From positions 124,001-188,000 of the IMG/VR virus record IMGVR_UViG_3300044638_006750: DNA of 64,000 nucleotides. One strand, 5' to 3'. The notes under the pieces were generated by a model that made no database searches, was not told where the DNA came from, and saw only the letters and a list, made by a program, of their open reading frames with translations. The translations under genes and the position numbers were made by a program. This document shows positions 38,700-61,139 of the stretch, piece by piece. The stretch's first letter is position 1. Each line of letters opens with the position of its first letter.

Positions 38700-39356
38700 T
38701 TATTTTGCTATATTTTTAGCAAATAGGCTTAGACCGTTTATAGAGTTCAGTCTAACTGCTTGTAAATCAGCCTTTTTAATGGCATTTGCTTGGTTATCAT
38801 TCCATATATTACCATTACAAATAATATTAATATCTGCAACTTTACGCTTAATCATAACAGATGCAAGGATGTTATCATTAATATCATCTAATAAATATCC
38901 TGTTGACGGCAAAATATTCTTAATACCATATCCATGTAGAATTTGAGCAATTTTATACAATAAATCATATGTGAATATTCTATATTCCAAAAAATACCTG
39001 ACTTCAATGTTCGTATAAGAAGAGCATAGCTCTAAAACATTTTTTACATCATCTCTAAACTTGTCGTATTTTCTGTTGGTTAATGGGCTTGGAGGAGCCA
39101 CAATATCAATAATAGAAGCCCCATTTTTGATGCATTGCTCAATGCACATTAGTCTGGTTTTTAGATCGGATGTACCCATAGGGTAGTCTATGGCAGCAGA
39201 GATTTTGATCCCACTAGGAATAATAGGTTTGACCACCTTTAAGTATGATGGTAAAACAGACAGTACGTCTATGTTGTATTTTATTGCTTCTGTAATATTA
39301 TCTTTATATTCATTATCATTAAGAGCAATATCGTATAAAGAATATTCTAATTTCAT
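38700..39356 (-). CDS. DeoC-like TIM-barrel protein lacking the catalytic lysines
   Basis: IDYPMG, NGASIIDIV, LPSTG (canonical KTSTG), IICNGN (canonical VKASGG). Confidence 0.8.
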   Translation of the reverse strand: MKLEYSLYDIALNDNEYKDNITEAIKYNIDVLSVLPSYLKVVKPIIPSGIKISAAIDYPMGTSDLKTRLMCIEQCIKNGASIIDIVAPPSPLTNRKYDKFRDDVKNVLELCSSYTNIEVRYFLEYRIFTYDLLYKIAQILHGYGIKNILPSTGYLLDDINDNILASVMIKRKVADINIICNGNIWNDNQANAIKKADLQAVRLNSINGLSLFAKNIAK

Positions 39357-40018
39357 TTCTTTTTATTGATTTTGAGACTATCTATTGAAGGATATTGTTT
39401 AGATCCCAAAATACCATCAGCAAAACCATAATATACTGTTTCTTCTGCTGTTAATATCCAGTCGCATTTATTTGCTAATTGTGACACAATATGTTTTTTT
39501 GCCATCATTTTTTTCCAATTTTTTTCTTTTGCAATAACACTAGTTTCCATACACCGGTCAGTGAATATGTCAACCATCTTGTCGGTTTCTCTGTCGTTCC
39601 ACGCAATACTACTTGATGCTGCTTTTGTATGTTCTTCATTAATACTAATAGACCCATAATGAATAAGCATATTTGTATTTGGCATTAATATTCTAGAATG
39701 TGCAGCTTGAAACAACACACTGCTACAAGATTCTACTTTTGCATAGGCTAGTATTATTATCTTGGCTTTAGAAAATCTAATAGCATCATACATACCTAAT
39801 CCATCTTGCCAATCTCCTCCCGGCAGATGCATATGGACTAAAATAGGATCATGAGAGATATGATTAAGTAATCTAAGATTTTTTTCGAATACGACAGAAC
39901 ACTTAAAATCTATTTGCTCATCTGCACTATCCGACAGATAAGAATGAAGAAAAATTTCTCTATTTTTAATATCAATATTAAAATTATGTATCTGATCTAT
40001 ATTTACTAAATCAATCAT
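39353..40018 (-). CDS. ClpP-family serine protease
   Basis: HLPGGD..GMYD, VESCS (Ser), LIHYG (His), CDWILTAEE.VYYGFAD (Asp). Confidence 0.88.
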   Translation of the reverse strand: MIDLVNIDQIHNFNIDIKNREIFLHSYLSDSADEQIDFKCSVVFEKNLRLLNHISHDPILVHMHLPGGDWQDGLGMYDAIRFSKAKIIILAYAKVESCSSVLFQAAHSRILMPNTNMLIHYGSISINEEHTKAASSSIAWNDRETDKMVDIFTDRCMETSVIAKEKNWKKMMAKKHIVSQLANKCDWILTAEETVYYGFADGILGSKQYPSIDSLKINKKK

Positions 40019-41832: not shown

Positions 41833-42528
41833 CTATTTCTTATTGTCTTTTGTCAGCTTGTTCCATTGTTCAGGGTCCGGTCTATCTTTATCTCCCGGTT
41901 TGGCCGGTCGATATTTTTTACCCTCCCTTTCTTTTTTCTTTCTGATATTGTCCCAAAGACCCGGTTTTGATGAACCAGCATCAGAACTATCATCGTCTTC
42001 GTACTCCGAAAACATTACAAAATCTCTGATGGATCGTAATTGATCCTCTATAACAGCAATTTTACCGAGAACCCACGCTTCTGTCAAGTTATCTATTACC
42101 TTGGGGTCATCGGAAGAATTATAAATATTTTTGGCATGGATAGAAATGGTTTTAAGTGCTGTTAGAGCCATGCTTAAAAATTCATTGCCAACAATTGCTT
42201 CATCTTCTTCTTCTGCTATAAGTGGAAGATTATTGTATTGTGTATTTCTAGAATCCTCATTAGAGAAATCAGAAGCCAATACCATATGTTTCATTTCTTT
42301 TTTTAGAACCTGTCCTGCGGTCCAATTTGGTCCAGCATTTGTGGTTTTATATGCCACAACCAAACCCATTGGTTCTGTGAAGGTGTCGATACCTTCTACA
42401 ACACCTATGCTATGGTAATACTTACACTCTTTGTCGTTATTCATAACCATATTGCCAACTGTGATTTTTTCATTACTTTTAGATAGTTCTTGTTGAATAT
42501 CTGTTAAAATATTTTTAAGTCTTTTCAT
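41833..42528 (-). CDS. Hypothetical (putative head-associated) protein
   Basis: C-terminal PGLWDNIRKKK..KPGDKDRP basic motif. Confidence 0.6.
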   Translation of the reverse strand: MKRLKNILTDIQQELSKSNEKITVGNMVMNNDKECKYYHSIGVVEGIDTFTEPMGLVVAYKTTNAGPNWTAGQVLKKEMKHMVLASDFSNEDSRNTQYNNLPLIAEEEDEAIVGNEFLSMALTALKTISIHAKNIYNSSDDPKVIDNLTEAWVLGKIAVIEDQLRSIRDFVMFSEYEDDDSSDAGSSKPGLWDNIRKKKEREGKKYRPAKPGDKDRPDPEQWNKLTKDNKK

Positions 42529-42533
42529 TGAAT

Positions 42534-42950
42534 TTAATCCTTAAGTGGACCGTTTGTAAGCCATGCATCACAAGTTCTACTACCAGCACATTTAAAATCA
42601 AATAATTCACAATATCCAAGATTAGATAAATCAACTATTGCTCCCGCTTCATTGAGATCTTCTTCACAAATACCCATTTCTATACATTTCATAATTTTTT
42701 CTTTAACAATGAAAGCAGCACAATTTGAACATAACATTGTTTTGGCTTCGTCTACAGTGGTCTTGAATAAGTCGGCTTTCTTTTGCCAAAACTCTGGATT
42801 ATCTAAATTCGGATTAGCAGGTCCATAGTTTGCCTTTTCAACACAAATTTTTCTGTTAGCTAAATTTAAGCTAATGTCCTGTGTCGCAGGTGGGCACTCC
42901 ATTTTTGCCTGAACAGAATTGAGAATTTCATTAACTCTAGAGTCTTTCAT
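42534..42950 (-). CDS. Cys-rich hypothetical phage protein
   Basis: CPPATQD..NYGPANP..CSNC..GYC..FKC..RTCDAW. Confidence 0.65.
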   Translation of the reverse strand: MKDSRVNEILNSVQAKMECPPATQDISLNLANRKICVEKANYGPANPNLDNPEFWQKKADLFKTTVDEAKTMLCSNCAAFIVKEKIMKCIEMGICEEDLNEAGAIVDLSNLGYCELFDFKCAGSRTCDAWLTNGPLKD

Positions 42951-42951
42951 G

Positions 42952-43554
42952 TTAAACCTGTATCGATAAGAAGTTGTCTAGACCCATTTGTTCAATTAGT
43001 TTTAGATAGCTTTCATAAAGTTCAATACCGTCTTCACTACCCTGAAGTAATGGGATCATCATATTAGCAGTAAGTTCATCCCCTACTGCCCTTGCCGCAA
43101 CAATTGTGGCACGTTCAGCAACAGCGGCTTCTTTTACCGAAGCTAAATTATAATTAATCATTGATACCATATCATGTCGTGTCCATGCTGGAGGAGATAC
43201 TGTTAATGGTTGATAGTCTTGATCAAAAAACTCTAATCTAGCTATATTAGCCATAGCATGTTGATGTTCTTGTACAGCGTCAGCCTTGATTACTTCCGCC
43301 AGTTTTTTATATCCCCATCTCTCTAAATGAACTGCTTGAGCACTTAATACTGTTGTTTGTTGCCAGTGAATATTAAGAGATTTTTTTAATAGATCAATAA
43401 CAGTTTCAGAGGAATGTGTTTCTACTTGTTGTGATTCTGTATTATCTGATACTATTTCTGGCTGTGGTTCTTGTTCTGGTTCTGGTTTTTGTTCTTCTGT
43501 ATTGGTTGCTTTTGCCACATCTTGTTCTTCAATTAGTTCATCTATTGATTTCAT
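42952..43554 (-). CDS. Bacterioferritin-like protein with a degenerate ferroxidase centre and acidic N-terminal extension
   Basis: Near-gapless manual alignment to E. coli Bfr (WGYKKL, E-H-Q-H, MGLDNFLSIQV). Confidence 0.82.
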   Translation of the reverse strand: MKSIDELIEEQDVAKATNTEEQKPEPEQEPQPEIVSDNTESQQVETHSSETVIDLLKKSLNIHWQQTTVLSAQAVHLERWGYKKLAEVIKADAVQEHQHAMANIARLEFFDQDYQPLTVSPPAWTRHDMVSMINYNLASVKEAAVAERATIVAARAVGDELTANMMIPLLQGSEDGIELYESYLKLIEQMGLDNFLSIQV

Positions 43555-43578
43555 CGTATAATTTCCTGTTGAATTAGT

Positions 43579-44136
43579 TTACCATGCTTTACAAGACCAA
43601 TATCTTGCTTTCCATTTTGGACCAGGATTATCACAATTGTGTCTAGCCCTAAAACTTTTACGTCTTTCTGGAATATTTTTTTTGATTTTCATGTTAGGGT
43701 CGCCAAAATTAACTTTGACAACATTACCTTTTTCATTTTTGACATAAACACTAAATTTTTTAGGACCACCCGGTGTTCTAAATGGTTTATTAAGTGTTAC
43801 TTTTCTTCCTTGGTATTCTGATGCTACTATATGAGAAATATCATAATCTTCTATCTCTTCGCCTGCATCAATATAGTCTTCATCTTTGGGAATAATTAAA
43901 TTGGATATGCTCAATTCTTCTACGCTACCACATTCTTCACAATCGAATTCTGACATAAAACCCAATATGGCAGCAACATTGTCTAAAAGGCTATTTTTTG
44001 ATTTTTTAGTTTGTCCTAGACAAATAGCTACTCGTTGTTTAGCGTCAGGATAGTCTTTTTTCATAATTTCGCTACTCATGCAACGAGAAACAAATTTTTG
44101 ACTATCTTCATTTGGTTTTTTTTCTGGGATTGGCAT
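43579..44136 (-). CDS. Hypothetical phage protein (DUF6321-like C-terminus, recalled from T4-like phages)
   Basis: LNKPFRTPGGPKKF.VYVKN..V.FGDPNM..RRKSFRARH.C..YWSCKAW. Confidence 0.6.
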   Translation of the reverse strand: MPIPEKKPNEDSQKFVSRCMSSEIMKKDYPDAKQRVAICLGQTKKSKNSLLDNVAAILGFMSEFDCEECGSVEELSISNLIIPKDEDYIDAGEEIEDYDISHIVASEYQGRKVTLNKPFRTPGGPKKFSVYVKNEKGNVVKVNFGDPNMKIKKNIPERRKSFRARHNCDNPGPKWKARYWSCKAW

Positions 44137-44155: not shown

Positions 44156-45241
44156 TTATACACAATTTATGATCTTGTCGGCAGAGTTATCCCATGAAAG
44201 CCTTTGGGCCGTATCTAGACCATTTGGATTTGTTTTAATATTATTCTTATATACATATCTTAAATGATCAATAATTTGATCTATTTGAGACTGTCCCAGT
44301 TTAGCCCAATTACCTTGTCCTCTAAAATATTTACCATCATATGCTGGCTCTGTCTCATTAATATCGACCATAAAACAATTGTCACTGGTGCAAAACTCTG
44401 TGTGTGCAGAGTAGTTGCTAGCTATAGCAGGTTTATTCATCGCCATTGTTTCTAGCAATTCAAGATTCCACCCTTCGGCTCTTGATATATAAACACCACA
44501 ATCTATATATGCTAATAATTTGGCAACGTCATTGTGCGTTTGTAGTTGCGGAAACACTTTAACTTTATCCTTTAGTTTACTATTTTGATACATTGTTTCC
44601 CATTGAACCTTTTCTTCTGGGAGGATATATCCATTATCGGAGGAGGCATTAATCCATAATTCAAAGTTTTCATTATTGGGAAATGCTTTCTCAAAAATAT
44701 TTAAAAGTATATCATGACATTTTCTAATCTCCCACTTACCAATAACAGAGAATATATATTTGTCTGGTTTATTTGTAATTTTATTAACTAGCGTATGATC
44801 GAATATGGAAGTATCAACACCCAATGGAACAACCGTTATAGGTGTTTTGATGCTATATTTATTCACTAATATATCTTTAGCCCAATGACTAGCAACATAT
44901 ACATGATCACAGCAACGGAAATTATGTTGTTCAATATTTGTTATTGTATCTAATTCAAAAAATGGGAAAACCCTATATTCGCCAGATCCTATGCGAGAAG
45001 CTAAATCCCAAGCGTGCCATATCTTGAGAGATACAGCTTTGTGATTATAACTATTTCTATTTTCTAGAGCTTGTTCTATAAGAGGTATTTTGTTCTGATT
45101 TATAGCTATGGGTTGGCCAATAGGAAATAGTGAAGTTTTTACACCCCGCTCCATAAGAGCCACTAGTATATTACAGCCAGCCACCCCATATCCTGTGTAA
45201 GTTACGGGTGCTTGTAGATTTATTTCTGATAATTTGCTCAC
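44156..45241 (-). CDS. GT4 glycosyltransferase
   Basis: TGYG, VPLGVD, GKWEIRK, SRAEGWNLELLETMAMNKPAI. Confidence 0.88.
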   Translation of the reverse strand: MSKLSEINLQAPVTYTGYGVAGCNILVALMERGVKTSLFPIGQPIAINQNKIPLIEQALENRNSYNHKAVSLKIWHAWDLASRIGSGEYRVFPFFELDTITNIEQHNFRCCDHVYVASHWAKDILVNKYSIKTPITVVPLGVDTSIFDHTLVNKITNKPDKYIFSVIGKWEIRKCHDILLNIFEKAFPNNENFELWINASSDNGYILPEEKVQWETMYQNSKLKDKVKVFPQLQTHNDVAKLLAYIDCGVYISRAEGWNLELLETMAMNKPAIASNYSAHTEFCTSDNCFMVDINETEPAYDGKYFRGQGNWAKLGQSQIDQIIDHLRYVYKNNIKTNPNGLDTAQRLSWDNSADKIINCV

Positions 45242-45244
45242 TAG

Positions 45245-46345
45245 TTAGACTCCGAAAATAGGGTTTTTATTAGAATGAATTTGATTAACTCTACAAAACT
45301 GTCCACATTTGATCATATGCTTAATATGTGAGGCGCCAATATAACAGCAGCAAGACCTAATACCTCCTAGTAATTCTTGCACAACTTTATCTAGAGATCC
45401 CCTGTAAGGTATAGTAATTTTTGTCCCCTCTGAGGCTCTATAGCTTTTTTTGCCGTCTTCGAAAATATCTTGTGAATGATGAGTACTCATTCCATAGTAT
45501 GTGAATCTTCCCTTGCTTTTTTCATCTGTACCAATTACTTTAGAGTAATCTCCACCAAATTCCCATTCTCCCTCACAAGGTTCAGTACCAGCAAAATACC
45601 CACCAAGCATCACAAAATCACTTCCTGCACACAATGCTTTACACACATCTCCTACTGTTTTATGTCCACCATCAGAACAGATCAACCCCAATTTTTTAGG
45701 GCCATTTTGAAGACCATGAGCAACATATGAATTTTCTAAAACACAAGATAGTTGCGGTATTCCGCATCCAGTTAAAAATCTGGTAGTACAAGCACTGCCA
45801 CCGCCTATACCCGCTTTAACTATGTCTATACCACCATATATTAAAAGTTCTTGCGTTGATGAAGTATTTGTAACATTACCTGCCATAATAATACTATCAG
45901 GAAAACTTTCTCTAACTTTATGACAATATTTAACAAATGCATCCATATGTCCATTTGGAACATCGATACAAATATTTGGTTGTTTGTGTAATAAATTTTT
46001 TAAGTCTAGCAGATAGTTAAGATCGCTTTTTTTATATCCTATCGAAACAAAAGTATAATCAATATTTTGAGGATAATTTGTAAAATAATCTAGTAGTTGC
46101 TGGATTGTGTGATACTTATGTAAACAAGCTATCATTTTATGATTAGCTAGTTGTTTGGCCATTTCAAAAGAACAAAAACTCATATTGGCACACATTATAG
46201 GTATGCCCGTCCAATGTCTAGGACTATGATAAAATTGAAAAGTTCTTTCTAGATTAATATCTGATCTACTAGTTAAAGTTGATCTTTGAGGAACAATAAG
46301 AACATCATCAAAATCTAACTTTGTTTCATTAATAATTTTTTGCAT
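45245..46345 (-). CDS. guaC: GMP reductase
   Basis: LDFDDVLI.P.RSTL.SR, W.GIPIM.ANM, CIDVPNG, GIGGGSACTTR, SDGG, YYGMS, RASEG, LGGIRS. Confidence 0.93.
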   Translation of the reverse strand: MQKIINETKLDFDDVLIVPQRSTLTSRSDINLERTFQFYHSPRHWTGIPIMCANMSFCSFEMAKQLANHKMIACLHKYHTIQQLLDYFTNYPQNIDYTFVSIGYKKSDLNYLLDLKNLLHKQPNICIDVPNGHMDAFVKYCHKVRESFPDSIIMAGNVTNTSSTQELLIYGGIDIVKAGIGGGSACTTRFLTGCGIPQLSCVLENSYVAHGLQNGPKKLGLICSDGGHKTVGDVCKALCAGSDFVMLGGYFAGTEPCEGEWEFGGDYSKVIGTDEKSKGRFTYYGMSTHHSQDIFEDGKKSYRASEGTKITIPYRGSLDKVVQELLGGIRSCCCYIGASHIKHMIKCGQFCRVNQIHSNKNPIFGV

Positions 46346-46348
46346 GTT

Positions 46349-46879
46349 TTATACCGAAAAGAAATACCACCTTTTGTGTGTATCAATATTCTCTGAATTA
46401 TCTATATGAGACAGATAGTTTTTAAGTTCGTCCCAATTAGAAAATATCATTTGGTGAGGTATAGTACCAAATAGCCAGTCCGGCGTTTGATTCTTACCTT
46501 GTTCCATATGTACTATTATGGGTTTTTTTTGTCTATTTGCCCAAAAAATTTCTTCGTATGTTCCACATGGATGAATATCTAAGTTTAGATTAACAATTAG
46601 AAAATCACTAATGTCTACTAATCTCAGATCTACACGACGTATAACCTTCATCATTTCTGCTAGTTCGTCGTATCTTTCAGACGCCTTTAGCTTTGTTTTT
46701 ATAATATGAGAATCATTGTCTTCCATACCTGTTGTAGTCGGCTTTGTTATAGGGTTGAATACTACAACACCCTTTTGTTCTAAAAATGGAGTTATATTAT
46801 CTCTCCATGTCATACCTCTGTCTGGAACTCTATCCATAGCACCAGCGAGATATACTCTTTGATTCTTTAGTCTATTCAT
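46349..46879 (-). CDS. Nucleoside 2-deoxyribosyltransferase / dNMP N-glycosidase-like protein
   Basis: VYLAGAM, FNP, DLRLVDISD, GTYEE. Confidence 0.82.
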   Translation of the reverse strand: MNRLKNQRVYLAGAMDRVPDRGMTWRDNITPFLEQKGVVVFNPITKPTTTGMEDNDSHIIKTKLKASERYDELAEMMKVIRRVDLRLVDISDFLIVNLNLDIHPCGTYEEIFWANRQKKPIIVHMEQGKNQTPDWLFGTIPHQMIFSNWDELKNYLSHIDNSENIDTHKRWYFFSV

Positions 46880-46932
46880 AGAAACACATTAATAAAAAAA
46901 GCACAAGAAGAAAAAGTAACATACAACATTAT

Positions 46933-47607
46933 TTATAGGTTAGACCAATCACCATTTAGTTTAGACCATTTGATATGCATAAGCGTTTCTGAGACACCAA
47001 AATAATATGGATTAATCAATCCTCTAAGTTTATTAGATTTAATTGTACTTGAAGCATTGTTGTGATGCTTACATAGTATACCGGGTGTTTTCTGAATAGT
47101 CCAGCCGTTTTTTCTTACACGCTTCATATAATCTATGTCTAAATGATAAAACGGACAACACAACCAGTCCCATTCTCCAACATCGCTTAGCATCTCTGTT
47201 TTGTATGCACAAAACAAATCTTCATTTTCATTGGCGTCCTGATGAACCCATCCTATTTTTTTAGAGGTGTCACTAAATGATAACTTAGCGGCTTCTAGCA
47301 GTATATTGTCCCCATTTTCTGTCATAACCTCGCAATCGTTGTGCATAAAGGTTATGAAGTCTGTATTTTCATTAATAGCAATAAACCTCATCCAATTATA
47401 GGTTTGAGCTGTGGTCAATGGTACTGGAGGTCTAATCAGCATGAATCCAAACTCAATATTTTGTCCAATATACTCAGCTAATGAACCATCATCACTATTG
47501 TCTATTAGTAGTGTATTAGGCCATAAATTAGGGACGCTTTTTAAAGCGGATAGGGTTAAATCTGGTCTGTTAACATGCGGAATAAAATGAATAAATTTCA
47601 TAATCAA
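46933..47607 (-). CDS. GT-A (GT2-like) glycosyltransferase
   Basis: LLIDNS, FMHNDC, YHLDID. Confidence 0.65.
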   Translation of the reverse strand: MIMKFIHFIPHVNRPDLTLSALKSVPNLWPNTLLIDNSDDGSLAEYIGQNIEFGFMLIRPPVPLTTAQTYNWMRFIAINENTDFITFMHNDCEVMTENGDNILLEAAKLSFSDTSKKIGWVHQDANENEDLFCAYKTEMLSDVGEWDWLCCPFYHLDIDYMKRVRKNGWTIQKTPGILCKHHNNASSTIKSNKLRGLINPYYFGVSETLMHIKWSKLNGDWSNL

Positions 47608-48182
47608 CTATTTTTTTGATTTTGTTTATTATATGTATAGACAAAGACATCATAGTTGCCCCAGATATCTTCAATCAGATCAGAGATAAAATTCCAATTG
47701 CCTCCAGCAATACCAGACCCGAATTTTGGAGTATGTATTTCTATTTTTTGGTTTTCTGATTGTGCTTGAAAATTCTTGATGAATTGACCAACAAGAGTCA
47801 TTGATTTAACTAGTGCCTGATAATTTAAACATCTTCTATGATTTTTATCTGGTAATCCGTTTTGAGCTATCATATTAGCAAACATTAGTTTATAGCCATA
47901 TTTATTTTTAACCGGAATCTCTATAATTTGTGCGTGTCCAAAATTATTTCTCATAAAGGTTTTACCAAGCATGTGATAATTTTCTTTTACGATAGGGTAG
48001 TGATTAGATACGGCAGCGGCAAAACCTCCGCCAAACACATCTATATTATTACATACATGAGGTACTATGACCGAACTTCCAAGTTTTTCAGAAGATAGTC
48101 TTTTTATTATTCTCTCAAAAATATCGTCATTACTTACTGTGTAAAAAGACCTATGAGATGCGTTGTGGTATTTTGTTTGCAT
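47604..48182 (-). CDS. Macro domain (ADP-ribose-binding/hydrolase) protein
   Basis: PHVCNN..FGGGFAAAV, FANMIAQ, PKFGSGIAGGNW. Confidence 0.85.
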   Translation of the reverse strand: MQTKYHNASHRSFYTVSNDDIFERIIKRLSSEKLGSSVIVPHVCNNIDVFGGGFAAAVSNHYPIVKENYHMLGKTFMRNNFGHAQIIEIPVKNKYGYKLMFANMIAQNGLPDKNHRRCLNYQALVKSMTLVGQFIKNFQAQSENQKIEIHTPKFGSGIAGGNWNFISDLIEDIWGNYDVFVYTYNKQNQKNS

Positions 48183-48203
48183 AGATTACTCCTCTTTTGA
48201 CTT

Positions 48204-48232
48204 ATAGTAGCTCCCAACCTACATACAAGCAA
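48204..48232 (-). promoter_or_regulatory. Sigma70-like promoter for the macro-domain gene
   Basis: TTGCTT-N17-TACTAT followed by a GAGGAG SD. Confidence 0.65.
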
Positions 48233-48243
48233 ACCATCAGCAT

Positions 48244-49077
48244 CTAAGACAAAATCTGTTCTATCAGATCGTCAGATATCGCCATTTCTTTATCGCTCGG
48301 GGAGTAGTATTTAGATTCTTCGTTAATCGTGGTATTATCAAAAATCCTATCTATCCACGTAAAACCATACTGATCCTTGTCATATTGAAGAACTGGAGTA
48401 GAATTATGTTCTAAAAAATTTTGATTAGATATTTTTTTCAAAAAATCAAATGATACTTTTTTTTCTAGCCTTTCTGCAATATTTTTAAACATAGCCATAC
48501 TTAATATTCTACAAGGGTGGTTATGAGTAGCAAATAATTTTGTTTTTAAAAAATTTTGATTTATAAAATTACTAACATTTTCATAACTGTGTTTAATTAA
48601 TGATTTATCCAATCTATGTTTAGATTGAATGAAACTATTTCTTGTATCTTCAATAGATTTTTTATATATATGAACAATATCGTATGCATATAATTCCAGC
48701 TCTAAGTTACTCATTCTAATTTCTTTTAGGTCTGAAATGTCAAATGTTTCAAAAAAGTTATTTGGAATATTTTTGTCTGTATTTAAAATTTGATAATTTT
48801 TTATAGTTTCTGTAATAATTAAATCTGTTTTCTGTAAAATGTTACGAATATCAGAGATCGGAAAAAGATAATTTTTCTCTGCATTCCATTTCTGTCCCCA
48901 AAACGGAGTATAAATACAATAAATGTTAAACTCTGGAAAAAGTAAACTTAAATAATACATTATTGGAGTTGTTCTACAGCTTCCCAAAAATAAAATATTT
49001 CTAGGTCCACACCCTTTATAAATCATGAAATTATTGCTAGCATTTAATTCACTAAGTTTCGCAGCGAGTATTATCAT
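48244..49077 (-). CDS. WcbI-like polysaccharide biosynthesis protein
   Basis: ILFLGSC, KLFATHNHP. Confidence 0.55.
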   Translation of the reverse strand: MIILAAKLSELNASNNFMIYKGCGPRNILFLGSCRTTPIMYYLSLLFPEFNIYCIYTPFWGQKWNAEKNYLFPISDIRNILQKTDLIITETIKNYQILNTDKNIPNNFFETFDISDLKEIRMSNLELELYAYDIVHIYKKSIEDTRNSFIQSKHRLDKSLIKHSYENVSNFINQNFLKTKLFATHNHPCRILSMAMFKNIAERLEKKVSFDFLKKISNQNFLEHNSTPVLQYDKDQYGFTWIDRIFDNTTINEESKYYSPSDKEMAISDDLIEQILS

Positions 49078-49721
49078 TGAATTAAATTTAAAATTTCTTT
49101 ATATTTGTTTGTTTTTAAAGTATTACAACTTGATGATGAGAAGTGTATTAATTTCCCTATTTTTGGATAATTAGCTACAAGATTTAAACTTTTATAATCT
49201 GTTTTACGGTTAGATAACATAATCATATCTGATGTATGTTCTTTATTATTTATAAGATGAATGTCTATTGGTTTTAGAACCATAAATGATTTCAACATAT
49301 TAAAATAATCTTCAGATCTACCAGACACTACACAAGGGACATGTCCCTGATAAATAGTTAATTCTGTGAAATCAAAAAAATTTATATCTTCTTGAAATGT
49401 ATTATTTATTACATCATAATCAATCATTACTCCTCCTCCTATGTTAGCCATTGCTAACCATCTCATATAACAATGATAGTCGTAGGACGAAGGATTGATG
49501 CTTGGGAATGTTTTTATTATTGTTGAATACTCATTATATAAAGGATGAGACAAAGCGTCTTTTTCGGATATTATCTTCAGTTCCCATCCATGATTTAGCC
49601 AAGATTTTGCACATAGCTCTATTAAAGACTCTTGAGAATATTCTTTTGCAGGCCGATGTTCGATCTCGGGTACAACTTCATAATATGTATAGATAATATT
49701 ATTTTTTGTGCAGTATTGCAT
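49074..49721 (-). CDS. Putative DxD glycosyltransferase
   Basis: KSW..HGWE, CYMRWLAM..GG.MIDYDV. Confidence 0.55.
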   Translation of the reverse strand: MQYCTKNNIIYTYYEVVPEIEHRPAKEYSQESLIELCAKSWLNHGWELKIISEKDALSHPLYNEYSTIIKTFPSINPSSYDYHCYMRWLAMANIGGGVMIDYDVINNTFQEDINFFDFTELTIYQGHVPCVVSGRSEDYFNMLKSFMVLKPIDIHLINNKEHTSDMIMLSNRKTDYKSLNLVANYPKIGKLIHFSSSSCNTLKTNKYKEILNLIQ

Positions 49722-50949
49722 AGTTATATTTTTCTTTTAGTTCTGTGATCGGCATATTTCTATTCTCTTCACTATTTAAACTTAAATTAACAATCAATGT
49801 TGTATACACATATTGTTTTTTTATATAGTTCCATAATATTTTATTGTGTTTAGATGATTCTCTATCAAAATGATAATGCATTACTAATTTAAGCAAATAG
49901 TCGTATGGCATGTCTGGACTATGATATTTAATATACTCTGGCATTACAGACTTACAAAACTGCATATATTCCTGAAATAAAGGATTTCCAGTAGCATATA
50001 TAGAAGTTCCTCCATTAATATGGCTATTTAATAAGGACGAATATGATTCATTACTAACGCCATCATACTGAGAACCAGAAATTAAAAAAGGTTGGGATGA
50101 ACAGTATTTAACCAGTCTATCTAACCACTTATCAGATAGATAACAGTCGCACTCCAACAATAAGCTAGAGTTGTATTTTCTTAACAAATCCATAACTGCA
50201 AAGAAAACATAGTTTGGACCCGATTTATATCCGTATAGAGGGATTACATTTTCATCACAATCAGAATTTTTTCCCCAATAAATATCTAAGTCTTGAGGGA
50301 TATCTAAATAAATAATCTCTAAATGTTTAAATTTGTTTTTTAAATTATTGATACCATTATTGTTTTCATAAAATTGTTGATCATATTTTTTATTAGCTAT
50401 AATTATTAAATCTATATTTTTTGACAAATCGGCATTGGTGTTTTTATCTATCTGGTCTAAGAAATTAAGATATGAGTTATCGGTAATTTCTTGTTCACCT
50501 GTTGCCAGTAAACAAATACATTCTAGGTTATTTTCATAGTGTTTAATGCTATCAAGCGAACAATACTGAGAGATATCTTTAAATAATCTAGTATCTTCTT
50601 TATTGACTTCAAAATATGACAATATATGATCATTTGTAATTAAAGTTTTATCTATTTCATTAAAATCTTTTTTTAAGTTATTAATAATTTGTTTAATATT
50701 ATGATATTTTTTTTCATATAATTGAATTAGAGTATAATAATACCATTCTGAAAATTCAATATTCTTGCTTTCCAACACTAAATTAATTTTTTCATCAATA
50801 TTATCTATCAGTTCTGAGAGTTTGTAGTATGGCCAAGACTGATTGGGGTTTAAATTAATAGCTTTATATAATAGTTCTTTAGCTATTTCTGGTTGATTAT
50901 TTTTAATACACAGCATTGCAGCTTTAGCGTATTCTTCCCAATTATTCAT
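49699..50949 (-). CDS. TPR + putative glycosyltransferase-like domain protein
   Basis: N-terminal TPR (LYKAINLNP), LLECDC. Confidence 0.5.
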   Translation of the reverse strand: MNNWEEYAKAAMLCIKNNQPEIAKELLYKAINLNPNQSWPYYKLSELIDNIDEKINLVLESKNIEFSEWYYYTLIQLYEKKYHNIKQIINNLKKDFNEIDKTLITNDHILSYFEVNKEDTRLFKDISQYCSLDSIKHYENNLECICLLATGEQEITDNSYLNFLDQIDKNTNADLSKNIDLIIIANKKYDQQFYENNNGINNLKNKFKHLEIIYLDIPQDLDIYWGKNSDCDENVIPLYGYKSGPNYVFFAVMDLLRKYNSSLLLECDCYLSDKWLDRLVKYCSSQPFLISGSQYDGVSNESYSSLLNSHINGGTSIYATGNPLFQEYMQFCKSVMPEYIKYHSPDMPYDYLLKLVMHYHFDRESSKHNKILWNYIKKQYVYTTLIVNLSLNSEENRNMPITELKEKYNYAILHKK

Positions 50950-53104
50950 TATATCTTTCTATATTAGAGATGCCTAAATTTTTGATAATATCTAAGAATT
51001 TTTTTTGATTAATAGCTTGAAATTTTTTAGTGCCTTTTAAAATATCTGTTCCGCTAGAGGAACCCTCGTCGTGAATAGCCTCGCATCTTGGATCATATAT
51101 GGTTTTTAATCCATAAAAATGAGCCCTGTACTGCCATTCACTATCTTCATAATACATAGAATCTAATTCATGGCTAAAAACACCTATTTTATTAATTGCT
51201 CCTCTTTTCATATATAATAAACATCCTGAGCAATATCCAGTATATTTAGGAATATTATATTTATAAGTTTTAGGATGGTCATATCTACCTTTATTCAAAC
51301 CAGTACCATCACTGTATAACTCTGCTCCAGCTTCAGCTAGTCTTCCGTCAGGATATATTGTTTTACCTCCAGCCGCCGCTATATAATCTGCTATATATGC
51401 GCTAGAATATAAATAATTTAACCAATATTTATCTATAATTTCAATATCATCATTAATTAATAATATATCTGACTCTTTGTATCTTGGATCAAGCATAATC
51501 TTATTATTTGGAATAATAAAATATTCATTTTGATTGTTTTTTATATATTCAATAGTATTAGGATATATTTGAACATATTTTTTTAATAGTCTCTCGGTTT
51601 CTTTATTTGTTCCATTATCTGTAACTACAATTTTATAATTTAAATAAGATGTTTTTTGTAAAATAGAATCTATACATTTACGTAATTTTTTGGGTTGATT
51701 ATATGTAACTATACTAATTGTAACTTGTTTATCTTGTAGCGTGTGTTTGAGAACATTGATAGCAGACTCTTTGGATACTATTTTATCTAGATGTTCTTTC
51801 CCGGCCTCACCCAGCTGTATTTTTTGTTTATTTTTAAGACTAAAATAGTACTGTAGACCATCTATAAATTCAAAATTAGATTCTGCTATAATAGCATGGT
51901 TTTTATGTATAAAATTAATACCTTCGTTTCCTATACTGGAAGTTATAATAGGAATGCCACTCATACCAGCATCACATATTTTCCCTTTTATGCCTGCTCC
52001 CCAATTTAGAGGAGCAATTAATATACTTGTTTTTTTATATACATCAGAAATTTTTTCTATACAACCCAAGTATTCTATAGAAGGATCAGAAGAGATATTA
52101 TCTTGTATTGTTTTATCTAAATTTGGACCAATAAGTAATAGTTTTGGTTTTATTTTAAGATTATTGTATATATTAGTTAGTTGAAAACTTTTAAAAATTT
52201 CTATAGATCTAATAGCACCATCTAGATTGGGACCATGGGCGTAATTTCCTATAAAAACTATATTATTCCCTAGTTTACAAGTATGTTTGTGATGAATATT
52301 GCTTAATATTTTAATGTTATGATTATATCCTATTTCATCTTGTATATATTCTTTATCTTTTTCTGTAACGGCAAAAATTACATTAGCAGATAAATATACT
52401 TGTTTTTCTATTTTTTTACGAACATCAAGAATGGATTGTTGTATATTTAAGTGTCCAGAGTCCTTTCCTCGCTGTTCTCTAATCCAGTGTACATCAACAG
52501 TATCTATAATAATTTTAATATTTGGATAATATTTTTTTACGATGTCAAGATATTGATTAGCTATATCATACCAAGAAAAAATTACATTGTCAAAAACAAT
52601 ATTTGATTTTTTAGCTTTTTTTAAATATGTGTCTAAGTATATTTGTTTGTCTATGTCTGGCAAAAAATATGGTATTTTTATAGCGTCTAGAGCATCTAGA
52701 TATTTTTTTTTAGAGGATCCATTACAAAGAAACCAGACATTATATTGCAGATCTATTTTTAATATTTTAAGTATCTCTAATAATCTATTGCCTCCGCTGC
52801 TGGTGTCGTAGTCTGGCGCCATTGGCGAAAAATATAATAGATTTTTACCATTATTCCAAATTTCTGGCACCAGTTCATGTGATGAAACGGTCTCTGAAAA
52901 CGATGGAACAATTTTTTTGTAAGCTCTATTCTCTTTACGTCCATATAAAATATAATGTTCTTTAGCCTTTTGTTCATCGTCTATACCGGCGACTATGAGG
53001 TCAGGATGTAACAGCGTATAAATAATAGGATCAAAATCTTTAGGTAGCAAAAATCCATATTGCTCAACAACTCTTTTGGTATATGTATTTGAAACCCATC
53101 TCAT
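50942..53104 (-). CDS. GT4 + GT2 fusion glycosyltransferase
   Basis: FDP..Y...HPD..HY..YGRKE repeat motif; PLNWGAGIKGK; IVTYN..LLINDD..YEDSE. Confidence 0.85.
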   Translation of the reverse strand: MRWVSNTYTKRVVEQYGFLLPKDFDPIIYTLLHPDLIVAGIDDEQKAKEHYILYGRKENRAYKKIVPSFSETVSSHELVPEIWNNGKNLLYFSPMAPDYDTSSGGNRLLEILKILKIDLQYNVWFLCNGSSKKKYLDALDAIKIPYFLPDIDKQIYLDTYLKKAKKSNIVFDNVIFSWYDIANQYLDIVKKYYPNIKIIIDTVDVHWIREQRGKDSGHLNIQQSILDVRKKIEKQVYLSANVIFAVTEKDKEYIQDEIGYNHNIKILSNIHHKHTCKLGNNIVFIGNYAHGPNLDGAIRSIEIFKSFQLTNIYNNLKIKPKLLLIGPNLDKTIQDNISSDPSIEYLGCIEKISDVYKKTSILIAPLNWGAGIKGKICDAGMSGIPIITSSIGNEGINFIHKNHAIIAESNFEFIDGLQYYFSLKNKQKIQLGEAGKEHLDKIVSKESAINVLKHTLQDKQVTISIVTYNQPKKLRKCIDSILQKTSYLNYKIVVTDNGTNKETERLLKKYVQIYPNTIEYIKNNQNEYFIIPNNKIMLDPRYKESDILLINDDIEIIDKYWLNYLYSSAYIADYIAAAGGKTIYPDGRLAEAGAELYSDGTGLNKGRYDHPKTYKYNIPKYTGYCSGCLLYMKRGAINKIGVFSHELDSMYYEDSEWQYRAHFYGLKTIYDPRCEAIHDEGSSSGTDILKGTKKFQAINQKKFLDIIKNLGISNIERYNE

Positions 53105-53784
53105 ATGATTAAATCAGTATTGTAAAAATTTTGCAATAATTGAATTTCGTATTTAATTTTATTACATATTATGTTTTTTACTTTGTCTCCTATTATAGAA
53201 TCAGAATCAACAGGAGACCTATTCATATGGTGATTAGTAATATGTAGTTGAAACGGATTTGAGTCATTAAAAATTTCACAAAGTTTTTGATTTTCTACCT
53301 GAAAAATAAAGTTATATTTTTTAAGTTCTTCTATAGCAATCTCATATTTTTCTTTTAAAGATTTTTCTTTATATTTCACATTAGTTAAATATTCTATAGT
53401 CATATTGCCAAATCTGTCTAAGTAATTATTAAGCAAATTTTCTGAAAGGTTGTCTATGTGTTGACCATAAAAATAATGAATGTGGCTTATCACTCGTTTA
53501 ACAGGATCTCTGATAGTCAGTATTCTGTATGTGTCTTCTATAGAAAGCTTAAAAATATCTTCTATATAATAGCTGGGACTATGGTCTATGAACATCAGAG
53601 TATCAGAGTGAATTGTGTCTATTAAATGAGGTTGTTCATATAAACACATATTTCCATGAGTAAATTGCGAGATATATGCTGGGGCTTGTTGAAAATGTTC
53701 GTTGTTCTTATAGCCTTCATAAAATCCTCTTTTAAGACTGGACCCTCCACATCTGGGAATATGATTTAAAACTAAGTATTTCAT
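53101..53784 (-). CDS. PAPS-dependent sulfotransferase (Sulfotransfer_2-like)
   Basis: HIPRCGGSS (5'-PSB), IRDPVKRVIS (3'-PB). Confidence 0.8.
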   Translation of the reverse strand: MKYLVLNHIPRCGGSSLKRGFYEGYKNNEHFQQAPAYISQFTHGNMCLYEQPHLIDTIHSDTLMFIDHSPSYYIEDIFKLSIEDTYRILTIRDPVKRVISHIHYFYGQHIDNLSENLLNNYLDRFGNMTIEYLTNVKYKEKSLKEKYEIAIEELKKYNFIFQVENQKLCEIFNDSNPFQLHITNHHMNRSPVDSDSIIGDKVKNIICNKIKYEIQLLQNFYNTDLII

Positions 53785-53788
53785 ATGT

Positions 53789-54541
53789 TTAGTTACAAAT
53801 TAGATTATTAATTAATAGTTTAGATAAAGGAACATCTTTATTGCAGACATACGAGTCTGAGCAATGATGTATGACACAATTGGGATCAATTAGCGAAAAA
53901 CTATAGTGTAATAAATTCCTAGAATAATATCCTTGAGGAATATTATAGTAAAGCAATCCTTCAGCCGATGATTCTAATATACCCTCATGTTTGCCTGTTC
54001 CAGCATATTCTTTTGAAGCTGGACATGAAAGATATTCTTTCATCATTATTTTATCCATAATATACATTGCTTGATGATTTTCTGGTAAATTAATATAATT
54101 TGATTTGTATTTTTTAATATCTCTAATGGAGTAAGTCCTGGTTATATCTGTTAAATACCATCTGTTTTGCAAATGCTCTACCCTGATGAATCCGGGAAAA
54201 AATCTTTTATCATCTATTTCTTGTCTATGATATAACCAATAATCTATATTATTCTGATCGATAACTACATCGTCTTCTGTATATATAAAATGTGTGTATG
54301 ATGAGTCATCATAATATTTTTGCATTACTGGAATATGTTTCCACGGTAAATGGAACGGGTGTTCTAGCTCTCCAACATAATAATATTCGGTATTTGGATT
54401 ATTGCATATAACAGTTATATCTATATTATATGACGTATTTTGTAATTTATTTATCACACGTTCTAAAAATTTTTTTCTTTCTTCTCTGTAATAGAAAGTT
54501 ATTACACAGGCTATTTTATCCGCCATACCAGTATCTTCCAT
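53789..54541 (-). CDS. Putative GT-A glycosyltransferase
   Basis: FIYTEDD motif. Confidence 0.5.
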   Translation of the reverse strand: MEDTGMADKIACVITFYYREERKKFLERVINKLQNTSYNIDITVICNNPNTEYYYVGELEHPFHLPWKHIPVMQKYYDDSSYTHFIYTEDDVVIDQNNIDYWLYHRQEIDDKRFFPGFIRVEHLQNRWYLTDITRTYSIRDIKKYKSNYINLPENHQAMYIMDKIMMKEYLSCPASKEYAGTGKHEGILESSAEGLLYYNIPQGYYSRNLLHYSFSLIDPNCVIHHCSDSYVCNKDVPLSKLLINNLICN

Positions 54542-55403: not shown

Positions 55404-55405
55404 AA

Positions 55406-57173: not shown

Positions 57174-57194
57174 AGTATTAACACCATTAAATTT

Positions 57195-59777: not shown

Positions 59778-59786
59778 TATTTTTAT

Positions 59787-60344: not shown

Positions 60345-60347
60345 GAT

Positions 60348-60810: not shown

Positions 60811-60820
60811 AAATTAGATC

Positions 60821-61033: not shown

Positions 61034-61084
61034 GACAAATCGAATTTTATCTCCCTAGCTATTGAAGTAAAGTGAACAACCAAT

Positions 61085-61112: not shown

Positions 61113-61139
61113 TATCTTTTTTGTCTAGATTTTCTTTGC

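What the first reader, a model, noticed from the sequence alone, without database searches (positions are those of the whole stretch)
42952..43554. Pseudo-bacterioferritin: ferroxidase centre and heme Met altered
Manual alignment to E. coli Bfr gives E18 to H, E94 to V, E127 to S, H130 to G and heme ligand M52 to H; only E51 and H54 remain. The C-terminal assembly helix is conserved and a ~50-aa acidic extension is added (seen; residue roles established). It could co-assemble with and poison host Bfr to free iron, bind a different metal or heme, or form a structural cage (inference).
Basis: partly seen in the sequence, partly recalled or inferred. Interest (0 to 1): 0.6.

Follow-up and report, generated by a model that had tools for sequence, protein, structure and literature searches.

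The report
Phage bacterioferritin-like protein without iron-oxidising site
A 233-kb lake-water phage carries a well-conserved copy of the bacterial iron-storage protein bacterioferritin that has lost its iron-oxidising centre and its heme ligand. It belongs to a large group of such proteins seen here only on phage DNA, whose job is unknown.

Summary
ORF 42952-43554 (-) encodes a 200-aa protein with a bacterioferritin (Bfr) fold. Only E51 and H54 of the six ferroxidase ligands remain (E18H, E94V, E127S, H130G), and the heme ligand M52 is His.

These changes are not decay. They are identical in 120 close homologues, and the domain has dN/dS of about 0.09.

A tree shows stepwise loss inside a clade that I found only on phage-like contigs. 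It has no match in GenBank phages or PHROGs. A one-pattern scan of GTDB genomes gave two hits, one on a phage head-gene contig and one on a contig I did not examine.

The iron-channel residues of E. coli Bfr are replaced by neutral or basic ones. The residues I recall as cage-assembly hot spots (R61/E128/E135) are kept. A Bfr-type twofold dimer is predicted (0.48 against 0.00 for controls).

The roughly 50-aa extension is N-terminal. It consists of a conserved short helix, a variable acidic tether and a conserved pre-domain motif.

The gene is an accessory cassette, present in about half of syntenic relatives.

Best reading: a self-assembling, ferroxidase-dead, heme-less "Bfr0-type" phage cage with a His-Glu-His single-metal remnant, acting as a metal buffer or docking scaffold. 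Poisoning of host Bfr and heme binding look unlikely. Function is unproven.

The parts
42952..43554 (-). Whole ORF, 200 aa plus stop: phage Bfr-like (Bfr0-type) protein P0001
43519..43554 (-). Residues 1-12 (MKSIDELIEEQD): conserved N-terminal short amphipathic helix. Family consensus is about K-[ST]-I-[DE]-E-L-L-x-E-Q.
   Evidence: for conservation. AF2 predicts a helix at 4-15 with pLDDT about 60. No second copy in the genome.
43435..43518 (-). Residues 13-40: variable acidic/polar low-complexity tether. The whole extension varies from 14 to 71 aa among homologues.
   Evidence: pLDDT below 50; dN/dS about 0.58 for the extension
43405..43434 (-). Residues 41-50 (SQQVETHSSE): conserved pre-domain motif. 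Family consensus is [SA]-Q-[EQ]-V-x-G-Y-[ST]-S-[EDNQ].
42955..43404 (-). Residues 51-200: bacterioferritin-fold domain with four long helices and a short E helix (192-199)
   Evidence: dN/dS about 0.09
43366..43368 (-). H63, at the position of ferroxidase ligand E18. Invariant His in 134 of 134 sampled members (32 jumbo-type, 102 wider clade).
43258..43269 (-). E96-H97-Q98-H99. E96 and H99 are the retained E51 and H54. H97 replaces the heme ligand M52.
   Evidence: H97 lies at the predicted twofold interface
43135..43137 (-). V140, at the position of ferroxidase ligand E94
43027..43038 (-). S173-E174-D175-G176. S173 replaces E127 and G176 replaces H130. E174 is the retained E128.
43114..43116 (-). 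E147: clade-specific invariant Glu at a position that is Tyr or Leu in canonical Bfr (E. coli L101). Role unknown.
43579..44136 (-). Conserved upstream flank of the variable slot: 185-aa protein of unknown function (C-terminus matches phrog_7595)
42534..42950 (-). Second cassette in the same slot: 138-aa Cys-rich protein with no family match. It occurs with or without the Bfr-like gene in relatives.
41833..42528 (-). Conserved downstream flank of the variable slot: 231-aa protein of unknown function

Best explanation
The ORF encodes a functional protein under purifying selection. It is derived from bacterioferritin and has become a phage-borne "Bfr0-type" subunit, meaning it lacks both the di-iron ferroxidase centre and the heme ligand.

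Shown:
- It has the Bfr fold.
- Four of the six ferroxidase ligands and Met52 are lost, and the replacements are fixed across homologues.
- The loss was stepwise on the tree.
- The residues that line the E. coli iron channels are replaced.
- The protein is found on phage-type contigs of several kinds.
- It is an accessory cassette in the jumbo-phage lineage.

Predicted in silico:
- It pairs through the Bfr twofold interface.

Inferred:
- It builds a 24-subunit shell, because R61, E128 and E135 (which I recall as assembly hot spots) and the E helix are kept.
- Each subunit holds at most one metal ion, at the invariant His63-Glu96-His99 remnant of site A.
- It does not oxidise or mineralise iron as Bfr does.
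- The N-terminus lies on the outer face, as in ferritins. If so, each particle would display up to 24 flexible acidic tethers, each ending in a conserved short helix.

Most likely mechanism: a non-catalytic cage made during infection. It buffers or sequesters a metal ion, and in the jumbo clade it docks a still unknown partner through the tethered helix. It is an auxiliary host-interaction function, not an essential one.
For: Fold and family.

Substitutions are fixed: invariant in 120 homologues and register-checked against E. coli Bfr.

Selection: dN/dS is 0.086 for the domain and 0.58 for the extension.

Stepwise loss on the tree, written as residues at positions 18-25-51-52-54-94-127-130: EYEMHEEH -> EYERHEEH -> EYERHE(T/S)x -> HYERHES(S/G/A) -> HLEVHVSG -> HLEHHVSG plus the extension. 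The H18/S127 clade has SH-aLRT support of 98.

Channels, mapped onto the E. coli residues listed in PMC4319037:
- Threefold D109/R117/D118 becomes R155/A163/N164.
- B-type N34 and D139 become R79 and K185, and D132 becomes variable.

Assembly: R61, E128 and E135 are kept as R106, E174 and E181.

Dimer prediction:
- Score 0.48 against a best control of 0.00. That mark was reached by 21 of 30 solved pairs and 0 of 23 single chains.
- The three runs agree on 100% of contacts, and partner pLDDT is at least 92.
- The interface is helices A and B plus the BC loop.

Heme: E. coli M52H is heme-free yet still stores iron (PMC3184983).

Phage-type contexts.

Absent from GenBank phages, PHROGs and PADLOC.

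Accessory slot.

Gene position: the minus-strand replication and metabolism arm, about 115 kb from the terminase and portal genes.

Modular N-terminal extension.
Against: - No experiment exists. Cage formation, metal binding and any partner are all inferred.
- The dimer pass may only reflect likeness to solved Bfr dimers. The tool itself warns of this.
- I had no model coordinates, so the geometry of H63/E96/H99, and of the invariant E147, was not measured.
- D92 and E95, at the positions of E. coli E47 and D50, stay acidic. I recall those two as inner-surface residues. If so, slow iron storage without a ferroxidase centre is not excluded.
- In a separate siphophage lineage the gene sits inside the head-gene cluster, which points to another kind of role.
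- No partner for the N-terminal helix was found.
Confidence: 0.5

Rival explanations
1. Host-Bfr poison. Dimers of the phage protein enter the host's Bfr 24-mer. They dilute its ferroxidase and heme sites and so change iron storage or release.
For: R61/E128/E135, which I recall as inter-dimer salt-bridge residues, are common to canonical and phage proteins. Natural hetero-Bfr cages are built from homodimers of two specialised chains (PMC12867745).
Against: - The nearest canonical Bfr is at most about 34% identical.
- The clade sits on several different phage backbones, so there is no sign of matching to one host's Bfr.
- Clade-specific invariant changes lie at the twofold interface (H76, R79, E108, W124, R126) and at the threefold-channel positions (R155, A163, N164).
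- The host is unknown, so it is unknown whether it has a Bfr at all.
Confidence: 0.1
2. Slow iron store without a ferroxidase centre, like the L chain of animal ferritin. The cage still takes up and nucleates iron on inner acidic residues and protects the infected cell or lysogen from iron-driven oxidative damage.
For: - Acidic residues persist at the positions of E. coli E47 and D50, as D92 and E95.
- The domain is acidic, with a net charge of about -7.
- Several relatives lie next to an integrase or a repressor, a typical place for genes expressed in lysogens.
- Heme-free E. coli variants still store iron.
Against: - In E. coli Bfr an occupied di-iron site is needed for core formation (PMC4319037).
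- The negative lining of the B-type and threefold channels is lost.
- H46 of the site I recall as the inner-surface iron site is Ala.
Confidence: 0.15
3. New small-molecule site. With E94V, E127S, H130G and Y25L, the former second iron site becomes an open pocket beside a 2-His-1-carboxylate metal. This could serve catalysis or ligand binding. Alternatively the former heme pocket on the twofold axis binds another ligand.
For: - H63/E96/H99 are strictly invariant, and small residues occupy the former site B.
- The residues at the ferroxidase-pore positions are more polar than in E. coli (Q65, Q66, S139, E142) and invariant.
- Polar and aromatic clade-specific residues line the twofold interface.
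- The gene is an accessory cassette, as auxiliary and counter-defence genes often are.
Against: - No coordinates were available to measure any pocket.
- Position 52 varies across the wider clade: R, H, Q, G and others.
- Clade-specific residues are not clearly enriched at the interface. My own count is 5 of 16, against roughly 3.5 expected.
- There is no PADLOC or other family hit.
Confidence: 0.12
4. Virion-associated cargo. The protein is loaded into the capsid, in the way ferritin-like cargo is loaded into encapsulin shells. The tethered N-terminal helix would be the loading peptide.
For: - In one siphophage lineage the gene lies between the portal and prohead-protease genes, just upstream of the capsid gene. 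This holds in all 22 IMG/VR loci and 4 further contigs.
- Foldseek finds ferritin-like folds inside phage proteins named "Prohead protease".
- A ferritin-like protein of Bacillus phage G was detected in virion proteomics (PMC12484599).
Against: - In this genome the gene is about 115 kb from the terminase and portal genes, in the replication and metabolism arm.
- It is absent from about half of syntenic relatives.
- No other ORF in the genome carries the N-terminal motif.
- No T4-type prohead protease was found (and that search's control was silent).
- By inference, a 24-mer could not leave through the tail.
Confidence: 0.08
5. A decaying gene remnant without function.
For: Both hallmark sites of Bfr are lost.
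Against: - The frame is intact and preceded by an AGGA.
- Domain dN/dS is about 0.09.
- 85 domain positions are invariant across 50 homologues.
- More than 1300 sequence clusters were found.
Confidence: 0.01

Closest known systems
Bacterioferritin (Bfr, TIGR00754; E. coli Bfr, PDB 1bcf)
   Same: - Four-helix bundle plus E helix, TM 0.82-0.90.
- E51, H54, R61, D113, E128, E135, G145 and N148 are kept.
- A twofold dimer is predicted.
   Different: - About 27-29% identity.
- Scores 39.9 bits against the family cut-off of 125.55.
- Four of the six ferroxidase ligands and the heme Met are lost.
- Channel linings are changed.
- An N-terminal tether is added.
- It is encoded by phages.
"Bfr0" paralogues and specialised chains of hetero-bacterioferritins (Bfr1 with the ferroxidase centre, Bfr2 with heme; PMC12867745)
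   Same: It meets that paper's sequence definition of a chain lacking both the heme Met and the ferroxidase ligands. It is also a case of subunit specialisation by loss of sites.
   Different: - Those are cellular paralogues that sit beside a complementary chain.
- This genome has only one Bfr-like gene.
- The clade carries its own invariant residues: H18, H31, R34, E63, E101 and others.
E. coli Bfr M52H (engineered; PDB 8w8z; PMC3184983)
   Same: His at the heme-ligand position.
   Different: The engineered protein keeps the ferroxidase centre and still stores iron. It is reported to be heme-free.
L-chain ferritin of animals
   Same: A ferritin subunit without a ferroxidase centre that still assembles into cages (established knowledge).
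   Different: The L chain works inside heteropolymers with H chains and has nucleation sites. No partner chain is known for this protein.
Phage Dps-like or ferritin-like proteins (Lactobacillus phages, Bacillus phage G gp346)
   Same: A ferritin-superfamily fold encoded by phages.
   Different: They belong to the Dps branch, share only 9-16% identity in the fold match, and are not related at sequence level.
Ferritin-like cargo of encapsulins (Flp, EncFtn)
   Same: A ferritin-superfamily protein with a short terminal peptide on a flexible linker. In the siphophage relatives the gene lies near an HK97-type capsid gene.
   Different: Those loading peptides are usually C-terminal and the cargo keeps an active iron site (established knowledge). 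Here the peptide is N-terminal, the site is lost, and no capsid gene is adjacent in this genome.

Membership tests
Ferritin-like domain (Pfam PF00210) | Score above the Pfam gathering threshold | tested here: met
   49.7 bits against a cut-off of 24.5, residues 53-190
Bacterioferritin (NCBIfam TIGR00754, equivalog) | Score above the curated cut-off | tested here: not met
   39.9 bits against 125.55; 41.2 bits in the genome search
Bacterioferritin | Four-helix bundle plus a short C-terminal E helix | tested here: met
   AF2 helices at 49-80, 83-109, 126-156, 160-190 and 192-199. The top Foldseek matches are Bfr chains.
Bacterioferritin | Di-iron ferroxidase centre: E18, E51, H54, E94, E127, H130 | tested here: not met
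   The six positions read H, E, H, V, S, G, so two of six are kept. This is invariant in homologues.
Bacterioferritin | Met52 as axial heme ligand at the twofold interface | tested here: not met
   His97 occupies the position. E. coli M52H is reported heme-free. Heme binding itself was not tested.
Bacterioferritin | Twofold dimer through helices A and B and the BC loop | tested here: met
   In silico only: score 0.48 against a best control of 0.00, three runs agreeing on 100% of contacts, partner pLDDT at least 92. The pass may come from likeness to solved Bfr dimers.
Bacterioferritin | 24-subunit cage | not testable with these tools
   Indirect only: R61, E128, E135 and the E helix are conserved.
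Bacterioferritin | Negatively lined B-type and threefold channels for Fe(II) entry (residues as listed in PMC4319037) | tested here: not met
   N34R, D139K, D109R, R117A and D118N, with D132 variable
Bacterioferritin | Ferroxidase activity and iron-core formation | not testable with these tools
   Needs purified protein.
Bfr0 class (chains lacking both functions, as defined by sequence in PMC12867745) | No Met at position 52 and an incomplete set of E18/E51/E94/H54/H131 | tested here: met
Dps | Sequence kinship with Dps proteins | tested here: not met
   46 of the 47 solved-structure sequence hits are bacterioferritins or their hetero-cage partner chains, one is a ferritin, and none is a Dps.
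Encapsulin-type ferritin-like cargo | Terminal loading peptide plus an adjacent HK97-fold shell gene | tested here: inconclusive
   A tethered N-terminal helix is present, but no capsid gene is adjacent in this genome. Siphophage relatives lie one gene away from the capsid gene.
T4-type capsid targeting sequence | An N-terminal signal shared by several proteins, plus a gp21-type prohead protease (PF03420) | tested here: not met
   No other ORF carries the motif. PF03420 was not found, but that search's control genomes were also silent.

The most novel reading that the evidence does not exclude
The phage Bfr0 clade is cargo or an accessory of phage heads. In this reading the tethered N-terminal helix of the jumbo-phage form is a loading or docking peptide, and the fixed position of the gene between portal and prohead protease in a siphophage lineage reflects packaging into an HK97-type capsid. 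That would be a phage counterpart of ferritin-loaded encapsulins, and a hint on how such compartments arose.
Probability: 0.07. Interest if true: 0.85.

Novelty: new variant of a known kind. Interest (0 to 1): 0.55.

Why it matters
Bacterioferritin is defined by two sites, the di-iron centre and the inter-subunit heme. This clade has given up both. It is widespread on phage DNA: more than 1300 sequence clusters in the jumbo-type group alone. It has nevertheless been kept almost unchanged and has gained its own set of invariant residues, which implies a different, selected function for a ferritin cage.

It is carried as a movable accessory gene on several unrelated phage backbones, mostly from lake and fresh water. 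It is missing from every sequenced phage isolate I could search, so it has escaped study.

Finding its function could reveal a new way for phages to handle host metals, or a new use of a 24-subunit cage. A ready-made, catalytically silent cage with an outward-facing tether is also of interest to people who engineer ferritin particles.

Tried and rejected
- **T4-like capsid targeting signal.** The N-terminus (MKSIDELIEE) recalled, from memory, the T4 internal-protein signal. No gp21-type protease was found, and no other ORF has the motif by regular expression or by a small HMM. The Glu after L-x is also not invariant in homologues. Rejected.
- **Bfd-like partner.** The Cys-rich 138-aa ORF just downstream seemed to resemble the Cys-rich tail of the protease gene that follows the Bfr-like gene in siphophages. 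BLASTP gave only E=1.6 and there was no solved-structure hit. The ORF also occurs without the Bfr-like gene (L120). Not supported.
- **Fusion link.** An N-terminal stretch of P0167 looked like the N-terminus of the upstream 185-aa neighbour. BLASTP gave E=25 and Pfam found no family. Not supported.
- **Core-gene idea.** The gene is absent from about half of syntenic relatives. Rejected.
- **Promoter and terminator scan.** Counts were at chance level.
- **Profile scans of contig collections.** The diverse alignment A2 had no stretch conserved enough to search with.
- **Viral-contig scan with P0137.** It found nothing.
- **Expression.** No RNA run holds the region.
- **Other libraries.** PADLOC and PHROGs gave no family. 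There was no match in 50,697 GenBank phage records for three members of the clade.
Full report
**The gene and its setting**

The window is bases 124001-188000 of a 232,683-bp IMG/VR virus record with about 33% G+C. The same DNA turns up in lake and freshwater metagenomes from at least ten studies, and no RNA run holds it.

The genome has two arms:
- A plus-strand arm from about 45 to 130 kb holds the terminase, the portal and several giant proteins.
- A minus-strand arm holds the following:
  - replication and repair genes: a DNA polymerase III alpha gene in two pieces, DnaB, primase, RecA, PhoH
  - nucleotide-metabolism genes: a class II ribonucleotide reductase, a dNMP kinase, GMP reductase
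  - a ClpP-like protease and a sigma-70 region-4 protein
  - many sugar-nucleotide and glycosyltransferase genes

The ORF in question, 42952..43554 (-), lies in the minus-strand arm, about 115 kb from the terminase and portal genes. It is packed tightly between co-directional genes. An AGGA lies 8 nt upstream of its ATG.

**Check of the observation**

The 200-aa product (P0001) matches Pfam Ferritin at 49.7 bits and E=4.7e-13. Against NCBIfam's bacterioferritin model it scores 39.9 bits, well below the cut-off of 125.55.

Its 47 sequence matches among solved structures are bacterioferritins or their hetero-cage partners, apart from one ferritin. E. coli Bfr scores E of about 1e-9. An AlphaFold2 model built on 50 homologues has pLDDT above 94 for residues 51-200. 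It shows four long helices and a short fifth one. Foldseek places it on Bfr chains at TM 0.82-0.90.

- E18->H63
- E51->E96 (kept)
- M52->H97
- H54->H99 (kept)
- E94->V140
- E127->S173
- H130->G176
- Y25, which I recall as a conserved Tyr beside the iron site, becomes L70

There are no gaps between these positions and conserved anchors (W35-G36, D113, G145/N148), so a register error is unlikely. The extension is real, acidic (net charge about -12) and N-terminal.

**The changes are selected, not random**

A word-based search found 1308 related sequence clusters. The best 120 are 164-221 aa long and at least 68% identical, and many lie on contigs of 100-250 kb. A scan of IMG/VR gave 111 loci.

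In the 120 proteins every substituted position is invariant, except H97, which is His in 119 of 120. In a 50-sequence alignment, 85 domain positions are invariant. For 81 genes, pairwise dN/dS (Nei-Gojobori, 300 random pairs) has a median of 0.086 in the domain and 0.58 in the extension. Synonymous divergence is near saturation, so these values are rough.

**Where it comes from**

An exhaustive search of 1.84 billion cluster representatives gave 123 hits. I tabulated eight key positions (18-25-51-52-54-94-127-130) in the 110 hits of at least 125 aa and built a tree rooted on E. coli Bfr. Together they show a graded series:

| Step | Residues at the eight positions | Note |
|---|---|---|
| 1 | EYEMHEEH | canonical Bfr |
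| 2 | EYERHEEH | heme Met lost |
| 3 | EYERHE(T/S)x | E127 and H130 lost |
| 4 | HYERHES(S/G/A) | 50 representatives, SH-aLRT 98 |
| 5 | HLEVHVSG | P0125 |
| 6 | HLEHHVSG plus N-terminal extension | the window's group |

No canonical Bfr in the list is more than about 34% identical to the query.

Every context I could read for the H18/S127 clade is phage-like:
- next to an integrase at the end of a tail-gene array
- next to an HTH repressor
- among UvrD and DnaN replication genes
- on a contig with Dam methylases and an Acb2/Tad1-hairpin protein
- in one siphophage lineage, between portal and prohead protease

The last arrangement is stable. The order TerL, portal, Bfr-like, S78 prohead protease, major capsid protein holds in 22 of 22 IMG/VR loci and four further contigs.

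No member matches any of 50,697 GenBank phage records, any PHROG or any PADLOC model. A scan of 185,579 GTDB species genomes gave two hits, both on short MAG contigs. One of them (L118) is plainly the same phage head cluster; the other (L117) was not examined beyond finding no head-gene match. That scan used a single peptide pattern, so it is weak evidence. The ESM Atlas cluster nearest to the query is labelled 100% viral. As far as these searches reach, the clade is confined to uncultivated phages.

**What has changed besides the two classic sites**

I compared three groups: 32 jumbo-type proteins, 102 from the wider phage clade and 46 canonical Bfr.

The phage proteins share invariant or near-invariant residues that canonical Bfr lacks:

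| E. coli position | Phage residue (this protein) |
|---|---|
| E18 | H63 |
| M31 | H76 |
| N34 | R79 |
| L63 | E108 |
| N78 | W124 |
| G80 | R126 |
| L101 (Tyr in most Bfr) | E147 (100%) |
| R102 (Asn in most Bfr) | R148 |
| D109 | R155 |
| Y114 | E160 |
| R117 | A163 |
| D126 | G172 |
| E127 | S173 |

They keep E51, H54, R61, D113, E128, E135, G145 and N148.

PMC4319037 lists the residues lining the E. coli channels. Mapped onto this protein:

| Channel | E. coli residues | This protein |
|---|---|---|
| Threefold | D109/R117/D118 | R155/A163/N164 |
| B-type | D132/E135/T136/D139, plus N34/E66 | (E or K)178/E181/(G or S)182/K185, plus R79/D111 |
| Fourfold | N148/Q151 | N194/(S or T)197 |
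| Ferroxidase pore | N17/V20/A21/L93/D96/G97 | I62/Q65/Q66/S139/E142/A143 |

The negative lining that is thought to draw Fe(II) through the shell is largely gone. [quoted passage not shown]

From memory, L68 and E81 are the Bfd-ferredoxin docking hot spots of P. aeruginosa BfrB; the L68A/E81A variants appear among the structure hits. If that is right, they correspond here to D113 and H127, so Bfd-driven iron release also looks unlikely. This last step rests on my own knowledge.

**Assembly**

The single complex-prediction job folded two copies of residues 48-200.
- The score was 0.48 against 0.00 for the best of three controls.
- That mark was reached by 21 of 30 proteins solved as pairs and by 0 of 23 solved as single chains.
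- The three runs agree on 100% of contacts, and partner pLDDT is at least 92.

The tool warns that such a pass may only reflect likeness to solved complexes. The interface consists of residues 64-79, 94-109 and 113-126, that is helices A and B and the BC loop. By my knowledge of Bfr structures this is the twofold interface.

H97 touches V94, S71 and T67 of the other chain, a small and polar surrounding. H76 and R79 touch 104-109 of the partner, including E108. Several clade-specific residues therefore sit in the dimer interface.

From memory, R61, E128 and E135 are hot spots for 24-mer formation in E. coli Bfr, and the E128R/E135R variant is among the structure hits. Since they and the E helix are kept, a cage is the likely final state. 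That is inference.

**Heme**

E. coli Bfr M52H and M52L lack heme but still take up iron (PMC3184983). A structure of the M52H variant is also among the fold matches (8w8z). In the wider phage clade position 52 is usually Arg and varies. Heme binding through two His97 side chains is therefore unlikely, though it was not tested.

**The N-terminal extension**

Across homologues it has three parts:
- a conserved start, about K-[ST]-I-[DE]-E-L-L-x-E-Q, predicted as a short helix at modest confidence
- a poorly conserved acidic/polar linker, which makes the whole extension 14-71 aa long
- a conserved motif, [SA]-Q-[EQ]-V-x-G-Y-[ST]-S-[EDNQ], just before the domain

This is the build of a docking peptide on a flexible tether. 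In ferritins the N-terminus lies on the outer face (established knowledge). A cage would then display up to 24 such peptides.

I found no partner. No other ORF in the genome carries the motif, and no T4-type prohead protease is present (whose control genomes were silent).

**The gene is an accessory cassette**

I fetched loci through the upstream neighbour, the 185-aa protein. In 31 syntenic loci the slot between that gene and the 231-aa downstream gene holds different contents:
- the Bfr-like gene in 14
- the Cys-rich 138-aa gene alone in 1
- another ORF of 215-238 aa alone in 5
- nothing in about 10

The Bfr-like gene occurs alone, with a 214-aa ORF (5 loci), or with the Cys-rich gene (L139 and this window). 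It is therefore dispensable for the basic life cycle, yet strongly conserved when present. It also appears at different places on unrelated phage backbones. That pattern fits an auxiliary, host-interaction gene.

**Interpretation**

The most economical reading is a self-assembling phage cage of the Bfr fold that no longer oxidises iron or binds heme. It keeps a single His-Glu-His metal site per subunit. In the jumbo-phage lineage it carries an outward docking peptide.

I rank a non-catalytic role, as a metal buffer or a docking scaffold, first, but only at about even odds. Rivals are given with their tests in the fields above:
- a slow L-chain-like iron store
- a new small-molecule pocket at the emptied second iron site or the former heme pocket
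- capsid association

Capsid association deserves mention for three reasons: the fixed position in the head cluster of a siphophage lineage, ferritin-like folds found inside proteins named "Prohead protease", and a ferritin-like protein detected in phage G virions (PMC12484599). In this genome, however, the gene's position and its accessory status argue against it.

**Comparison with what is known**

The protein is a relative of Bfr but fails the curated family cut-off and two defining features, so it should not be annotated "bacterioferritin (cytochrome b1)", as JGI names its homologues.

By the sequence rules of PMC12867745 it falls in their "Bfr0" class, chains lacking both functions. That paper mentions the class only as rare cellular paralogues.

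Phage-encoded Dps-like proteins are known from annotation but are a different branch. In seven full-text searches I found no paper that describes this phage clade. That is not proof that none exists.

**Limits**

- The host is unknown.
- Expression is unshown.
- All statements on assembly and metal binding are predictions.

Noticed in passing
L089:3774-4262, L090:4117-4584, L095-L116, L118:3739-4203: In a diverged siphophage lineage a 155-162-aa member of the same phage Bfr-like clade, without the extension, is fixed between the portal gene and a long S78 prohead-protease gene, just upstream of the major capsid gene. Its gene ends overlap the neighbours. This holds in all 22 IMG/VR loci and four other contigs.
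   Followed up: partly
window 42534-42950 (-): A 138-aa protein with nine Cys has no Pfam, PHROG or solved-structure match. It is an independent cassette in the same variable slot and is present without the Bfr-like gene in L120. A loose likeness to the Cys-rich tail of the L090 protease protein (weak HiPIP hit) was not significant (BLASTP E=1.6).
   Followed up: partly
window 41833-44136 (-) and loci L119-L150: The stretch between the 185-aa and 231-aa conserved genes is a variable slot in this phage group. It may be empty, or hold the Bfr-like gene, the Cys-rich gene, a 214-238-aa ORF (a PAP2-family protein in L092), or combinations of these.
   Followed up: partly
window 14573-18943 (-): DNA polymerase III alpha is encoded in two ORFs. 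One (17066-18943) has the PHP and NTPase domains; the other (14573-16189) has the finger and HHH domains. A 234-aa RNase T-type exonuclease gene (16191-16895) lies between them.
   Followed up: no
window 43579-44136 and 41833-42528 (-): Both conserved flanking proteins end in basic, Lys/Arg/Pro-rich C-terminal stretches (for example GLWDNIRKKKEREGKKYRPAKPG). The 185-aa protein's C-terminus matches phrog_7595, of unknown function, and relatives of that domain gave more than 594 hits in IMG/VR.
   Followed up: no
window 39353-40018 (-): A ClpP-family protease gene (Pfam CLP_protease, E=7e-15) also matches head-maturation protease PHROGs. It lies far from the terminase and portal genes, so its role (prohead protease or general protease) is open.
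   Followed up: no
window 44156-63999 and 12771-14108: The window holds an unusually large set of glycosyltransferases and sugar-nucleotide enzymes: GT1, GT2, GDP-mannose dehydratase-like, epimerases and an HtrL/YibB-like protein. This suggests the phage makes or modifies a glycan.
   Followed up: no
BFVD hits (A0A6J7WPK9, A0A6J7WIS1, A0A6J7XDU5 and long proteins named Dps): Foldseek finds ferritin- or Dps-like folds inside proteins of uncultured tailed phages that are named prohead protease. These may be fusions of a head protease with a ferritin-like domain. The sequences could not be fetched here.
   Followed up: no
P0167 (209 aa): One member of the wider clade carries a different, basic N-terminal extension of about 58 aa (…AELIRSGHPRDQAAAIAYKEARKSKRSRRRGERK…). 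N-terminal add-ons therefore arose more than once in this clade.
   Followed up: partly
L143:3554-3613: A syntenic locus without the Bfr-like gene keeps a 20-aa stretch that is 75% identical to the Bfr-like domain, right after the upstream neighbour. It may be a remnant of a lost copy.
   Followed up: no
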